A stretch of DNA of 64,000 nt from Perna viridis. Its lineage: Eukaryota. Position 1 is the first letter of the stretch; each line of letters begins with the position of its first letter. The notes beneath the pieces are model-generated. The model was not told where the DNA came from. It saw only the letters and a program-made list of their open reading frames with translations, and made no database searches. The stretch is taken from assembly GCA_037379345.1 (NCBI GenBank), contig CM074525.1:3977170-4041169 (forward strand), read 5' to 3'. Shown here one piece after another: positions 2,723 through 34,126 of this stretch. The position numbers and the translations under genes were made by a program.

Positions 2723-2772
2723 TGCATCGGCCGGGAATCGAACCCGGGCCGCCCGCGTGGCAGGCGAGCATT
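2723..2772 (-). pseudogene. 3' portion of tRNA-Gly(GCC) cut by the family A retrotransposon
   Basis: tRNA sequence stops at GAGCATT (+ strand) and is followed by the element poly(T). Confidence 0.93.
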
Positions 2773-2925
2773 TTTTTTTTTCTTTATAAAAGTTTATTCA
2801 CAGAAATATATTTACATGTAAAAGAATTATTGGGCTAATCTCCCACTAATTCACATATCACAGATAACAATTAATAATATCATGTATGTTAAGTCAATCT
2901 TCCATATTATATAATGGCTTGCATA

Positions 2926-5900
2926 CTAAAAGTCAATGACAACATTTTCGTCACAGATACGTAAAACAGGATTTCTTTTCAAGTAGTATTTTTCAAACAA
3001 TGAAAAGTTCTTCTTTTTATAATACATATAAGCATAATTTACATGTCGCTGAAGTACGGACTTAAAATAATTTTGAATATCTAGTACTTTCTCATCTTTC
3101 ACAGCTACATTTCTCCTTTTCACAACACAAAATTTTCTAAATGCTAAGACAGTATTAACAAAATAATAGTTACTGTTTTTATCTTTCTCAGTTAATCCAA
3201 AATAACATAGAAAATTAAAATCAAGCATATTGACATATCTTGTAGAGCTATTGCACAAAATATTATGTAGGAAATCCTTCAAAAAGTTGTTGAATTTAGT
3301 TAAACATCTACATGAAATTATAAGATGTTCCAAATCTTCATGTACATCATAACATACTGGACATAAAGAATCAATAGTAATATGACATCTGAATAATCTC
3401 TCCTTCGTAAATAAAACTCTATGGAAAATTTTAAACGATGTTTCAATACAGTCACTAGGTAAAAATGGAAAATTCAAAATATTTTGAACCCTTTGGACAT
3501 TAAAATCACTAAATACTTCATACCAGTAGCTGACAGCATTTGGCATTATTGTGCTAGTTTCTAAGAGCATACCATAACAAATTTTTGCCGTTCTAGGTAA
3601 TGTATATTTTTTACCATTATCATTATATACTACATTCAGAACAGGTTTATTATAGTTATATGCATTTTCTCTAACTAAACGTTTTACCTGTTCTGGAATA
3701 CACTGCTTAATACTCTGAACTACATCAACAATTCTATCAGCAACTAACTCAGGAAACCTTTGAGAGACTATATCCTGTACATATTTGTTCTTCAAAAAAC
3801 CTTTTTTACATTCAAATGCCAAGTCTTTAATTTTAACTATTCCTGCATCTACAAAGGGTTTAATATACAACATTTTCCCATCATTTACTATCATTGGATT
3901 ATAAAACAATGGAATATCAAATACATTATTCACATTTATATCAATTTCCATATGAGTACGAATCTTTCCCCAAGCATATAACATACACTTATAAAAATCA
4001 GGTAAAATACCTAATTGTCTATTATTAAGATCACAAAATAGAATTTCCATACCAAGATTCATATCTAGAACTTTTGATAAAAAATAAGTGCAAGTATGTT
4101 TCCACGCTGCATTATAATCATTATCTAACAATCGACTTAAAAATTTAAGTCTAAAAGCATACATTTTGTGAAATATATCTGGAAAATTTAAACCACCATT
4201 CAAAACTCTATTTATTATAACATCATATGCAACCAATGATGGCTTATTATTCCACAAAAAATCTACACACATCTTTTTAATTTCTAAATAGTATTTCTCA
4301 GGTATATTGACCACCATTAGAGTATACCATAATTTACTCATCAACAAGGTATTTATAACCGTTACTCTACCCTGTATTGATAAATGTCTCATTTTCCAAA
4401 AATTCAATAATTTTGAAATAGATTGCGCTTTGCAATCCCAATTTAAATTATCACAAACAGTTTTGTCTTTGCCAATCCATATACCTAAAAGCTGAAGAAC
4501 CCCATCACACTCTTTAATATTCCAAGCATCTATTTCTTGTTTCGATATCTTTCCGGTACCCAATGCCAAAATTTCAGATTTATCTTTATTCAATTTTGCC
4601 CCAGATGCTTGTTCATACAAATTTAAAACTCCAAAGGCCTCATTTACTGAATTTTTGTCAGACAATATCAATGTTGTATCATCTGCATGTGAAAATATTT
4701 TCTCCTCACCAGATGCATTGGGAATTTGTATACCATGAATTCTATCATTCCTTTTAATCATAATACTCAAGGGTTCAGCAACTAACACATATAACAAAGC
4801 TGATATAGGACACCCTTGTTTTACAGAGTTCTTTAATTGAAAATACTTGGACAAAAAACCATTGAATTTGACAGTGCTGAAAATGTCAGTATAAAATATC
4901 TTTATCCATGAAATGAATTTCTCCCCAAATCCAAATTTCTGCAATACAGAAAATAAGTAGTCATGTCCAACTCTGTCAAATGCCTTTTCCTGATCAAGTT
5001 TCAGCAAATAACATTCCAAATCATCCATTTCTACTAATTCTATAATATCTCTGATACTTACTGTAGTATCAGAAATATCTTTACCAATAATACAACAACT
5101 CTGATTTGGTGATATAATCTTTGGTAATACAAATTTAAATCTGTTGGCCATTACTCTGGCTAAAATTTTATAATCAACATTTAACAAAGTTATAGGTCTG
5201 AAGTTTTTCAGGTCAGACTTGTCACCTCTATTCTTATAAATCAGGTTAATCATTCCATATCTCATAGATCTTGACAAAATTTTATTTTCTCCAATACAGT
5301 CATAAATATATTTCAATACCGGTTTCAACTCACTAAAAAAGTATAAATAAAATTCTACAGTAAGCCCATCAGGGCCAGGTGTTTTACCCTTTTTCATGCC
5401 TTTTATAGAGGTTTCAATTTCATCACTAGTAATTTCACAATCACAGTTTTCAATATCACAATTTTCAACACTAACGTTAACACAGTCTAACATTTCCTCT
5501 ATTGCCTCATGATCAGTTTGAACACAAGAAAAGAGTTTCTCATAAAAATTGTGTACAACATCTAACATTTCAGCAGAATCATTGACAACAACACCATCAC
5601 AATTTTTTAAACTACATATCATATTTCTGTTTTGTCTATGTTTCTCTAAACTTAAGAAATAAGCTGTATTCTTATCACTTTCAATTGAATACTGACATTT
5701 TGATCTAATAATAGCACCATTACATTTGTGTTTTTCTAAACTTTCTAATTCATCTTTCAATTCTAAATATTTGACATGATCAATTGATATACCACAAGCT
5801 GACTTCACAGACATTTCTTGCAGCTTATTTTGTAACCTAAAATACTCTCTATTTAATTCTTTTTGTTTCTCTTTTCCATATATTTGGCTGACTTTCTTTA

Positions 5901-32587: not shown

Positions 32588-33856
32588 TTACTTGGATGAA
32601 TTTGATTCTGTTAATTTGTTTCTGGGATCCATTCTTATCTTTTTCAATTCATCTTTCGAAAACTTTGGACCATTCACCAATCTTTTGCGGCGAATTTTCA
32701 CCATATTCACAGCCAACTCCTCATCAGTCATCTCAGTGTCACTATTTATACCAGAGGGGGCAGAATTAGTGTGATGAGGAGGGGATTGTGAAGTAGAGGG
32801 GGGAGGGCTAGTTGATTTTTCATTACTTTTTTTAACAGGTAAATCAACAAAAGAGTTATTGTCTAATTGTTCCGTCTGATTTCCACCAGAGGCCATCAGG
32901 TTTAGTTCCTCGTCAGATTGTCCATTATCATCACCATTTTCTCCAGATTTATGTGTATCATCATGATTGTTATCATTTATGCTCTCATCATGTTCATTTG
33001 TAACAGGATCATCATCTTTTTCTCTACCATTAGCAACATCAACATCATCATCTTTGATATCATCATACTCATCATCACTGCCTATCTCATCTTTTTCGAC
33101 ATTCTCATCAGTGTCGATCTCCTCATTATCATCATTGTTTTGGGACTCATGTGTGTCATCGGGCCAACTGGGGCACTTACATCTCGTCACATGCAGATTA
33201 CACTTACTACATGGAGGAGTGTTACAAAATCGGGCTAAGTGCCCAAGCCTTAAACACTTGAAACATCTGTTTTCTGGACATTTCGAAAACACATGATCGG
33301 TTTCAAAGCATTTGGTACAAACTTTCCTCTGATTATCGTGTGTCACACGAATATACTCAAACGAGTTAACACCTGTTGGTAATTTCATCGTGTAAGGGAG
33401 GCTTTTAATTTCATTGTTAAATTTCACCACAACATACCTCGTGCCATTTTCCACTTGAGTGCCTGGGTGAACGTTTCGTCTCATCGATGACTTCAATTCA
33501 AGGCCAAGATTAACTAATTTATCTGTTATTTCCGAGTCTGCAACGTAGTGCGAAACATTGAAGAAACTAACAACTTTTTGCTCGGAAAAAATCTGTTTGG
33601 GTTTAAAAGATTTACTTTCAACCTTAAAACCAGTATCAACCAAAAGTTCCACAGCATCAGTTTGTTTGAGTGTTATTTCAAAGAAATTACCGCTTTTTGG
33701 TACACACGCTTCCACCATTCCCTCCCCAACTTCCTTTTCAATACTTGCAATGACATCAGCTGCCTTTATACGTTTATTATCACCAACATCAACTGACACT
33801 GTGTGTTCCTTCAGTTTTCGGGTTTTGGAACGGGGCTCCCCCCTTTCACCCGACAT
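32588..33856 (-). CDS. Family B ORF1: gag-like zinc-knuckle protein
   Basis: 422 aa. CTKCFETDHVFSKC, CFKCLRLGHLARFC, CSKC..CKC, D/E/N-rich tract, basic C-terminus. Homologous to family A ORF1 (ACVPKSG vs ACVPKTG, GTR, PYTMK vs PYSMK). Confidence 0.93.
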   Translation of the reverse strand: MSGERGEPRSKTRKLKEHTVSVDVGDNKRIKAADVIASIEKEVGEGMVEACVPKSGNFFEITLKQTDAVELLVDTGFKVESKSFKPKQIFSEQKVVSFFNVSHYVADSEITDKLVNLGLELKSSMRRNVHPGTQVENGTRYVVVKFNNEIKSLPYTMKLPTGVNSFEYIRVTHDNQRKVCTKCFETDHVFSKCPENRCFKCLRLGHLARFCNTPPCSKCNLHVTRCKCPSWPDDTHESQNNDDNEEIDTDENVEKDEIGSDDEYDDIKDDDVDVANGREKDDDPVTNEHDESINDNNHDDTHKSGENGDDNGQSDEELNLMASGGNQTEQLDNNSFVDLPVKKSNEKSTSPPPSTSQSPPHHTNSAPSGINSDTEMTDEELAVNMVKIRRKRLVNGPKFSKDELKKIRMDPRNKLTESNSSK

Positions 33857-34055
33857 GGTGAGGGGAGGGCTAAACTGTCACAAAATGTCAAAATATGGAC
33901 AAATAAAGGTTCTATACTTCACCAATAATGACACTAAATCAATACATGGACCAACCATCAACTGATGGCTGGTTTTAAACAGCAAAAACTTCGGATTTTC
34001 TCTCAGCTAAATCAGGTACGTCCGCTCACCTTGAAAGCTTAACCGGAAGTTGAAA

Positions 34056-34126
34056 TGCATCGGCCGGGAATCGAACCCGGGCCGCCCGCGTGGCAGGCGA
34101 GCATTCTACCACTGAACCACCGATGC
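34056..34126 (-). tRNA. tRNA-Gly(GCC), complete, abutting the 5' end of the family B element; native terminator lost
   Basis: Complete 71-nt gene followed by only TTTC and then element sequence. Confidence 0.95.

What the first reader, a model, noticed from the sequence alone, without database searches (positions are those of the whole stretch)
2723..34126. Two distinct, intact Tx1-like retrotransposon families target the same position inside tRNA-Gly(GCC)
Seen: all three insertions with a visible 3' end lie in tRNA-Gly, co-oriented with it, at the D-loop/3' edge of the A box. Family A inserts after GAGCATT (+ strand; between tRNA nt 21/22) at 2772 and 11629. Family B inserts after GAGCATTC(T), 1-2 nt away, at 27454/5. 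None of the 18 tRNA-Glu genes and no spacer carries a 3' junction. The families are deeply diverged (roughly 60% aa identity in the RT core by eye, less elsewhere), yet both have fully open ORFs. Known: the Tx1 clade includes APE-endonuclease elements specific for multicopy RNA loci (Dewa for tRNA-array spacers, Keno for U2, Mutsu for 5S). Inference: this is an old, still-active lineage with a sequence-specific APE endonuclease for the tRNA-Gly coding region, with several families sharing one niche as R1/R2 do in rDNA. It could be of interest as a site-specific integration tool. I cannot confirm novelty without a database search.
Basis: partly seen in the sequence, partly recalled or inferred. 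Interest (0 to 1): 0.9.

Follow-up and report, generated by a model that had tools for sequence, protein, structure and literature searches.

The report
LINEs that insert inside tRNA and 5S genes
Two young, intact jumping genes (LINE retrotransposons) of this mussel-like genome do sit at one spot inside tRNA-Gly genes, but genome-wide they hit the same spot in at least 21 kinds of tRNA gene and a fixed spot in 5S rRNA genes, so they seem to find RNA polymerase III genes as a class and not tRNA-Gly by its sequence.

Summary
The window carries a 1235-bp tRNA-Gly(GCC)/tRNA-Glu(TTC) array with three co-oriented LINE insertions in tRNA-Gly, at the stated bases. Both families have open ORFs. ORF2 identity is 44% overall and 61% in the RT core.

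The tRNA-Gly-specific reading fails. Of 50 genomic 3' junctions, 40 lie in 21 tRNA species and 7 in 5S rRNA genes. Two lie in other genes with an A-box-like motif, and one is off-target. All tRNA, 5S and A-box-like junctions are co-oriented. In tRNA genes the nick falls 2-7 nt after the A-box GG; in 5S genes it falls at nt 27/28. Matched ends give target duplications of 11-17 bp.

Genome-wide, 20 poly(A) insertions share the 5S site and none was found at the comparable part of U6. Relatives 43-62% identical, including one in Mytilus coruscus, show the same junctions. A fish relative sits in 5S, as Mutsu does.

Best reading, inferred: the element is tethered to the TFIIIC-type polymerase III gene complex. 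The endonuclease then nicks the template strand, usually beside an A in the sense strand.

No paper found describes this. Other agents of this scan already reported the same phenomenon on other pieces of this genome.

The parts
102..36086 (.). Tandem array of a 1235-bp unit: tRNA-Gly(GCC) on the - strand and tRNA-Glu(TTC) on the + strand
2723..2772 (-). 3' part of tRNA-Gly (about nt 22-71) left downstream of family A
2773..8663 (-). Family A, full length. Poly(A) 2773-2781, ORF2 2926-6825, ORF1 6832-8406, 5' UTR 8407-8663. The 5' end is set by 26 other copies.
8664..8672 (-). Nine filler bases repeating the element's own 5' terminus. The array unit resumes at about unit position 801, so about 750 bp including one tRNA-Glu is missing.
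11580..11629 (-). 3' part of tRNA-Gly downstream of the truncated A copy
11630..12657 (-). Family A, 5'-truncated copy of 1028 bp, 99.2% identical to the full copy. Insertion is precise, with a 0-2 bp duplication.
12658..12680 (-). 5' part of the same tRNA-Gly (about nt 1-21/23), upstream of the truncated copy
27404..27455 (-). 3' part of tRNA-Gly (about nt 21-71) downstream of family B
27456..34050 (-). Family B, full length. Poly(A) 27456-27464, ORF2 28707-32558, ORF1 32588-33856, 5' UTR 33857-34050. The 5' end is set by other copies.
34051..34126 (-). Complete tRNA-Gly plus 4-5 trailer bases directly upstream of B. This is the upstream copy of a target duplication of about 55 bp. Array periodicity shows that nothing was deleted.
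1..101 (-). 5' end of a third LINE (97% identical to L084:976-1075). Its body lies outside the window.

Best explanation
Families A and B are autonomous APE-type LINEs of the L1/Tx1 group. ORF1 carries CCHC knuckles; ORF2 carries APE, RT and a C-terminal zinc-binding domain; the elements end in poly(A). They integrate by target-primed reverse transcription inside RNA polymerase III genes that have internal promoters. Shown: the first nick is on the template (antisense) strand of the gene, and the element is always co-oriented with the gene. In tRNA genes the nick falls within a small window 2-6 nt (family A) or 2-4, once 7, nt (family B) after the A-box G18G19. In 5S genes it falls at nt 27/28. 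In family A the nick always follows an A of the sense strand, which fits pairing of the poly(A) tail with the nicked strand. The second strand is usually cut 10-17 bp further on, and sometimes 30-60 bp further, which can rebuild a whole tRNA upstream of the element. Inferred: the site is not read from DNA sequence. It is set by a tether between an element protein and the TFIIIC-containing transcription complex, which tRNA (type 2) and 5S (type 1) genes share and U6 (type 3) genes lack. The endonuclease then cuts at the nearest suitable base. Each insertion separates the A box from the B box and so kills that gene copy. The host tolerates this because the targets are large tandem arrays.
For: Fifty junctions were read from fetched loci: 40 in 21 tRNA species, 7 in 5S, 2 in other A-box-like genes and 1 elsewhere. 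Whole-genome exact listings of the two element tails agree: apart from one nested copy and one real off-target, the remaining non-target hits are no more than the chance-level control count. Twenty distinct poly(A) insertions in 5S lie at one nucleotide plus or minus 1, with a control count of 0. No poly(A) insertion was found in U6 nt 20-37, although at least 48 U6 copies stand in one array. In that array family A hit a tRNA-like gene with A and B boxes in the spacer. A weight matrix built from the tRNA sites ranks the true 5S site only 32nd of 127 within the 5S gene, and 5S nt 8-27 holds no A box. The same target gene is cut at alternative bases 2 nt apart, in family A always after an A. Eight matched 3'/5' pairs give duplications of 11-17 bp. 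Family B gives 10-15, 30 and 55 bp. The dual tRNA-plus-5S target is kept across lineages whose APE domains are only 38% identical. It is also kept in relatives 43-62% identical from other samples and from Mytilus coruscus (tree).
Against: No biochemical or expression data exist. The fish relative in 5S resembles Mutsu, which the literature treats as sequence-specific with subfamily-specific targets (PMC5340908). An inherited DNA-reading mode for 5S therefore cannot be excluded. tRNA D-arm sequences are conserved enough that a loose sequence or shape rule could cover most tRNAs. Copy numbers of 5S, U6 and tRNA genes were not counted, so the absence from U6 is suggestive only. One M. edulis relative (43% identical) lies in a tRNA-array spacer, and a Patella relative lies in a non-tRNA repeat.
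Confidence: 0.55

Rival explanations
1. The endonuclease, alone or with other ORF2 parts, reads DNA sequence or shape loosely. It accepts the conserved D-arm region of most tRNA genes and, separately, the loop-B region of 5S rDNA inherited from a Mutsu-like 5S-specific ancestor.
For: Fish relatives in the sister clade sit in 5S within about 6 nt of the mollusc site. Mutsu is described as sequence-specific (PMC5340908). All non-tRNA, non-5S targets but one carry an A-box-like motif at the right spacing. U6 is not hit.
Against: The tRNA sites and the 5S site share no motif. Flanks differ widely among the 21 tRNA species. The cut point slides by 2-4 nt within one target. The dual target is kept although the APE domains are only 38% identical.
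Confidence: 0.27
2. A ruler measured from the Pol III start site through TFIIIB or the polymerase itself, independent of TFIIIC, cuts about 25-32 bp downstream of any Pol III start.
For: 5S is cut at +27/28. tRNA genes are cut at mature nt 20-25, plus a short leader.
Against: No insertion was found at the corresponding part of U6 despite a large array. Start sites were not measured.
Confidence: 0.1
3. One reading: a sequence-specific endonuclease for the tRNA-Gly(GCC) coding region.
For: All three junctions in the window are in tRNA-Gly.
Against: Only 3 of the 50 junctions read from fetched loci are in tRNA-Gly, and all three are the window's own copies. With equal targets, three of three in this window has p about 0.15.
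Confidence: 0.01
4. Insertion is random, and only copies in multicopy RNA genes survive selection or are multiplied by array homogenisation.
For: Targets are mostly tandem arrays. Some neighbouring copies look like duplicates of one event (for example L036/L037).
Against: The pattern shows single-nucleotide precision, strict orientation, 21 target species with different poly(A) lengths, and proper target duplications.
Confidence: 0.02

Closest known systems
Mutsu (5S rDNA-specific Tx1-group LINE of zebrafish; Kojima and Fujiwara 2004; PMC5340908)
   Same: APE-type LINE with two ORFs and poly(A). It inserts co-oriented into the 5' half (loop-B region) of 5S genes. A fish relative 34% identical lies at 5S nt about 20-22, in the sister clade of the tree.
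   Different: Mutsu subfamilies are reported to be restricted to one 5S sequence variant each and are not reported in tRNA genes. The families here use 5S and at least 21 tRNA species.
Dewa, Keno, Tx1L (other target-specific members of the Tx1 group)
   Same: Same element architecture and the same strategy of living in multicopy small-RNA loci. One M. edulis relative does lie in a tRNA-array spacer, as Dewa does.
   Different: Each of those has one sequence target: the spacer beside tRNA-Leu, U2, or the Tx1D transposon (PMC3706591). The site here lies inside the gene and is shared by unrelated sequences.
Dictyostelium TRE5-A/TRE3 and yeast Ty3 (Pol III-complex-directed retrotransposons; PMC5911963)
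   Same: They target tRNA genes of all kinds and 5S genes at a set distance and orientation. Targeting depends on TFIIIC/TFIIIB and not on sequence. This is what the present elements appear to work like.
   Different: Every element in that review lands upstream or downstream of the gene and spares it. The elements here land inside the gene, between the A and B boxes. They occur in animals, and host-factor dependence is untested.
Dada DNA transposons (PMC3706591, PMC8869645)
   Same: They insert inside tRNA, 5S and snRNA genes, often at the A box.
   Different: They are DDE transposons. Each family is specific for one RNA gene and is read as recognising sequence.

Membership tests
APE-type non-LTR retrotransposon, L1/Tx1 group | ORF2 with N-terminal APE endonuclease, RT and a C-terminal Cys-rich domain, collinear with L1 ORF2p | tested here: met
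   Pfam finds APE, RVT_1 and zf-RVT. Human L1 ORF2p aligns over residues 18-887 with E = 5e-81.
APE-type non-LTR retrotransposon, L1/Tx1 group | Poly(A) tail, variable 5' truncation and target-site duplications, as expected for target-primed reverse transcription | tested here: met
Tx1 clade in the strict (Repbase) sense | RT tree groups the element with Xenopus Tx1L, Keno, Dewa and Mutsu rather than with L1 | tested here: inconclusive
   No named Tx1L, Keno or Dewa sequence was available. The nearest named relatives are the zebrafish pol-like protein BAC82613 (35% identity; which element it is was not verified) and a 5S-inserted fish element.
Sequence-specific (single-target) LINE such as R1, Tx1L, Mutsu | All copies lie in one target sequence | tested here: not met
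   Targets are 21 tRNA species, 5S and two other genes, with no shared motif between the tRNA and 5S sites.
Pol III-complex-directed retrotransposon (Ty3, TRE5-A type) | Hits many different Pol III genes at a fixed position and orientation relative to promoter elements | tested here: met
Pol III-complex-directed retrotransposon (Ty3, TRE5-A type) | Targeting needs TFIIIC/TFIIIB bound to the gene and an interaction with an element protein | not testable with these tools
   Only indirect evidence: type 1 and type 2 genes are hit and U6 is not.
Pol III-complex-directed retrotransposon (Ty3, TRE5-A type) | Insertion outside the transcribed gene, sparing it | tested here: not met
   Insertion lies between the A box and the B box.

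The most novel reading that the evidence does not exclude
A large, old clade of bivalve LINEs finds its targets by docking on the TFIIIC-type Pol III gene complex and integrates inside the gene at a measured point. This would be the first protein-tethered, in-gene LINE targeting seen in animals. Because the complex and its genes are conserved in all eukaryotes, it would offer a natural writer into multicopy tRNA and 5S loci.
Probability: 0.5. Interest if true: 0.85.

Novelty: new variant of a known kind. Interest (0 to 1): 0.75.

Why it matters
Known LINEs with strict targets read one DNA sequence. Known retrotransposons guided by the Pol III machinery (yeast Ty elements, amoeba TRE elements) land beside the gene. 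Here an animal LINE clade lands inside the gene, at one measured point, in many unrelated tRNA genes and in 5S genes. If host factors set the site, this is convergent evolution of Pol III-guided integration in animals. It would also provide a tractable system for studying how a target-primed reverse transcriptase can be aimed by a protein tether. It bears as well on how bivalve tRNA and 5S arrays are eroded and renewed, and on the search for integration tools aimed at harmless multicopy loci.

Tried and rejected
- RNA evidence. One run search found three raw RNA-seq runs of the species.
Later genome-wide work used exact pattern listings instead.
- Missing contigs. Two relatives (P0079, P0110) returned no DNA, and P0035's contig ends in poly(A). 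Deeper branches of the tree therefore have no known target.
- Weight matrix. The matrix aligned on the nick has low information because the nick slides. It is used only to show that the 5S site does not resemble the tRNA sites.
- Deletion reading for family B rejected. I first read B's 5' junction as a 1.18-kb deletion. Array periodicity shows it is a 55-bp duplication.
- Other readings rejected. 3' transduction does not explain the odd left flank of A, because there is no T run at the boundary. Microhomology with the spacer does not explain A's 5' junction, because the extra 9 nt repeat the element's own end.
- Literature. Seven full-text searches and nine papers gave no description of LINEs inside tRNA genes. 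Repbase and Dfam could not be searched.
- ESM Atlas. It gave only generic LINE clusters.
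Full report
WHAT IS IN THE WINDOW

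ARAGORN finds 17 intact tRNA-Gly(GCC) genes on the - strand and 18 tRNA-Glu(TTC) genes on the + strand. BLAST of one repeat unit against the window shows a regular 1235-bp tandem array from 102 to 36086, interrupted three times. The interruptions are as follows.
- A full-length element, family A, at 2773-8663.
- A 1028-bp 5'-truncated copy of the same family at 11630-12657, 99.2% identical to the full copy.
- A full-length element of a second family, B, at 27456-34050.

All three lie on the - strand, like tRNA-Gly. Each ends in a poly(A) run that abuts the 3' part of a tRNA-Gly gene.

Both full copies have two open frames. ORF2 has APE endonuclease, reverse transcriptase and the C-terminal zf-RVT domain. 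It is collinear with human L1 ORF2p over residues 18-887 (E = 5e-81). ORF1 has weak CCHC-knuckle matches. ORF2 of A and B are 44% identical overall. Identity is 61% in the RT core and 35-42% elsewhere. ORF1 identity is 35% over 198 residues.

THE 5' JUNCTIONS IN THE WINDOW

The truncated A copy is a clean insertion. The tRNA-Gly 5' part resumes at 12658 with a duplication of at most 2 bp.

The B copy is directly preceded by a complete tRNA-Gly (34056-34126) plus 4-5 trailer bases. The array continues in register on both sides, so nothing is deleted. The last 51 nt of the tRNA plus the trailer are duplicated, giving a target duplication of about 55 bp.

The full A copy has nine filler bases that repeat its own 5' terminus. 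It is then joined at about unit position 801, so about 750 bp including one tRNA-Glu are missing. A separate 503-bp deletion lies 47 bp beyond its 3' flank.

GENOME-WIDE TARGETS

The window is C15:3977170-4041169 of a 723-Mb assembly. The 3' ends of A and B each find dozens of near-identical copies. I read the flank of every fetched copy and matched each flank to intact genes in the same loci.

| Family | Junctions read | In tRNA genes | In 5S genes | Elsewhere |
|---|---|---|---|---|
| A (at least 97% identical) | 30 | 24 | 4 | 1 in a tRNA-like gene; 1 in an unknown 150-nt gene that begins with an A-box-like motif |
| B (at least 94% identical) | 20 | 16 | 3 | 1 at an unrelated site |

- Family A tRNA targets: Asp, Gly-GCC, Thr-TGT, Thr-CGT, Thr-AGT, Tyr, Arg-CCT, Ile-AAT, Ala-AGC, Leu-AAG, Leu-TAG, Leu-CAA, Phe, Lys-CTT and Val-TAC.
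- Family B tRNA targets: Gly-GCC, Thr-AGT, Asn, Met, Arg-CCT, Pro-AGG, Leu-AAG, Leu-CAG, Leu-CAA, Ala-AGC, Ser-TGA, Ser-GCT and Asp.
- Together the two families use 21 tRNA species. Every tRNA and 5S junction is co-oriented with the gene.
- Only three of the 50 junctions are in tRNA-Gly, and they are the window's own.

Exact whole-genome listings of the two element tails give the same picture. Apart from one nested copy and the one real off-target, the remaining hits outside small RNA genes are no more numerous than the reversed-pattern control. Further diverged families, 77-87% identical in the UTRs, show the same flanks.

With about 20 Gly and 18 Glu sites in the window, three of three hits in Gly has p about 0.15 under equal targeting. 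The window itself therefore never showed a preference for Gly.

WHERE EXACTLY THE ELEMENTS INSERT

In tRNA genes the first base after the poly(A) lies 2-6 nt after the A-box G18G19 for family A. For family B it lies 2-4 nt after, and once 7 nt. This corresponds to canonical nt 20-24, at the boundary between the D loop and the 3' strand of the D stem. Family A uses two alternative points 2 nt apart within a single target (Tyr, Ala, Thr-TGT). In all family A cases the preceding sense-strand base is an A. Family B departs from this in four of its junctions. This pattern looks like a positional window combined with a preference for a base that pairs with the poly(A) tail.

In 5S genes both families insert after nt 27, and in a few cases after nt 28. 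A genome-wide pattern finds 20 distinct poly(A) insertions there: 17 at nt 27/28 and 3 at nt 28/29. All are co-oriented, and the control count is 0.

The nicked strand is the template strand of the gene. Eight elements whose two ends were both fetched give target duplications of 11-17 bp. Other copies are flush, or show a deletion of about 5 bp, or carry filler bases. Family B 5' junctions give duplications of 10-15 bp (5S, Leu, Arg twice), 30 bp (Met) and 55 bp (the window copy). Several carry one to three extra G before the element's first base, which is compatible with a capped transcript. The intact tRNA-Gly upstream of B is therefore the long end of an ordinary distribution and needs no separate mechanism.

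SEQUENCE OR POSITION?

The tRNA sites and the 5S site share no motif. 5S nt 8-27 holds no A box. A weight matrix built from 20 tRNA sites ranks the real 5S site only 32nd of 127 positions within the 5S gene. The flanks of the 21 tRNA species differ widely.

The two non-tRNA, non-5S targets both have an A-box-like motif, with the nick 4-6 nt after its GG.
- One is a tRNA-like gene with A and B boxes in the spacer of a large U6 array.
- The other is a tandemly repeated 150-nt gene of unknown family that ends in a T run.

U6 itself is never hit, although at least 48 copies stand in one array with a 691-bp unit. Neither family A nor any poly(A) element at U6 nt 20-37 was found. tRNA and 5S genes share TFIIIC and a gene-internal promoter, which U6 lacks.

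The dual tRNA-plus-5S target is kept by A and B although their APE domains are only 38% identical. A third lineage, about 43% identical to both, keeps it as well (see the next section).

I therefore prefer a tether to the TFIIIC-type transcription complex, with the endonuclease cutting at the nearest suitable base. This is an inference. A loose sequence or shape rule remains possible. The copy numbers of 5S, U6 and tRNA genes were not counted, so the contrast with U6 is suggestive only.

RELATIVES AND AGE

The protein search finds 423 relatives. The closest, at 58-70% identity, come from Logan and ENA assemblies and from Mytilus coruscus. A cloud at about 43% identity includes M. edulis and M. 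coruscus, and more distant relatives at 38-39% include Patella. Flanks from other data are listed below.

| Relative | Identity | Source | Position of the 3' junction |
|---|---|---|---|
| A-like | 62% | M. coruscus genome | tRNA-Gly(GCC) in a Gly/Glu array, same junction as in the window |
| A-like | 60% | an ENA sample | tRNA-Glu(TTC) at the homologous point; the contig's 5' flank is the 5' half of another tRNA |
| B-like | 57% | an ENA sample | tRNA-Gly(TCC) |
| Third lineage | about 43% to A and B | an ENA sample | tRNA-Ile(AAT) |
| Third lineage, same protein | about 43% | another sample | 5S at nt 27/28 |
| Neighbouring branch of the tree | 40-44% | an ENA sample | tRNA-Phe |
| M. edulis copy | 43% | M. 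edulis genome | spacer of a tRNA array |
| Patella relative | 38% | Patella genome | a non-tRNA repeat |

In a FastTree of 124 ORF2 proteins, A and B are sisters within a 14-row clade. The confirmed tRNA/5S inserters span a 47-row clade. The sister group of all mollusc-type rows is a fish-type clade. It holds the zebrafish pol-like protein BAC82613 and an element that lies in a fish-type 5S gene at nt about 20-22. That is where Mutsu is reported to insert (PMC5340908).

The niche is old and shared by many lineages. Copies of A and B are 97-100% alike and carry intact ORFs, which points to recent activity.

COMPARISON WITH WHAT IS KNOWN

- Zebrafish Tx1-group elements are each tied to one sequence: Mutsu to 5S, Keno to U2, and Dewa to the spacer beside tRNA-Leu (PMC3706591).
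- The 2018 review of Pol III-directed retrotransposons lists only elements that land upstream or downstream of tRNA or 5S genes: Ty1-4, TRE5, TRE3, DGLT-A, NLTR and others (PMC5911963).
- Dada DNA transposons do land inside tRNA, 5S and snRNA genes, but each family takes one gene (PMC3706591, PMC8869645).
- I found no paper describing LINEs that insert inside many tRNA genes and 5S genes. Repbase and Dfam could not be searched.

The elements work like Ty3 or TRE5-A, using a gene class, a fixed position and a fixed orientation. By descent, however, they belong to the Tx1/Mutsu neighbourhood of APE LINEs. I rate this as a new variant of a known kind.

EARLIER NOTES OF THIS SCAN

Agents working on other pieces of this genome had already reported that several LINE families insert at one point inside nearly any tRNA gene and inside 5S genes. 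They read this as promoter-measured (s1-755810, s1-755822, s1-769349, s1-769360). I reached the same reading independently before seeing those notes. This report adds:
- whole-genome tail listings;
- the contrast between 5S and U6;
- matched target duplications;
- the junctions in other species;
- the tree with the fish 5S relative.

LIMITS

The relatives and the 15 large pieces of the assembly suggest a mytilid-like bivalve.

Noticed in passing
window 1-101: 5' end of a third LINE (97% identical to L084:976-1075) on the - strand. It is joined just past a tRNA-Glu position, and its body lies outside the window.
   Followed up: partly
window 2676-2680: A 503-bp deletion of array unit positions 686-1188 lies 47 bp beyond the tRNA-Gly fragment that flanks family A. 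No T run marks the boundary, so this is not a 3' transduction.
   Followed up: partly
L012 and L081 (G000:C11, about 1.39 Mb): Tandemly repeated gene of about 150 nt and unknown family. It starts with an A-box-like motif, ends in a T run and has no Rfam match at E <= 0.01. Family A hit it 4 nt after the GG, with a 16-17 bp duplication.
   Followed up: partly
L027 and L082 (G000:C2, 52.19-52.39 Mb): Large U6 array with a 691-bp unit. Each unit also holds a tRNA-like gene with A and B boxes about 260 bp upstream of U6. Family A hit that gene, not U6.
   Followed up: partly
L049-L058 (G000:C13 and C15): Relatives 78-82% identical to B's 3' UTR. Each is followed by a diverged tRNA-Met-like 3' part with an 18-nt insert after the anticodon loop. 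This may be one old insertion copied about within a larger repeat.
   Followed up: no
L021 and L077 (G000:C15, 17.64 Mb): One family A copy has a tRNA-Ala 5' flank (with 14 bp of overlap) and a tRNA-Tyr 3' flank. It is either a recombinant of two copies or a deletion between neighbouring genes.
   Followed up: no
L082 and L066: L082's 5' junction holds about 14 nt of the 5' part of another tRNA as filler. L066's 5' junction lies exactly at the 3' end of a complete tRNA-Ser. Template switching onto tRNA transcripts is a possible cause.
   Followed up: no
L100 (GCA_977066275.1): A genome with a fish-type 5S gene carries a relative 34% identical, inserted in 5S at nt about 20-22 with a 2-bp duplication. 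It is probably a Mutsu-type element.
   Followed up: partly
L091 (Mytilus edulis) and L092 (Patella caerulea): Relatives 43% and 38% identical lie in a tRNA-array spacer and in a non-tRNA repeat respectively. They may have other target rules.
   Followed up: no
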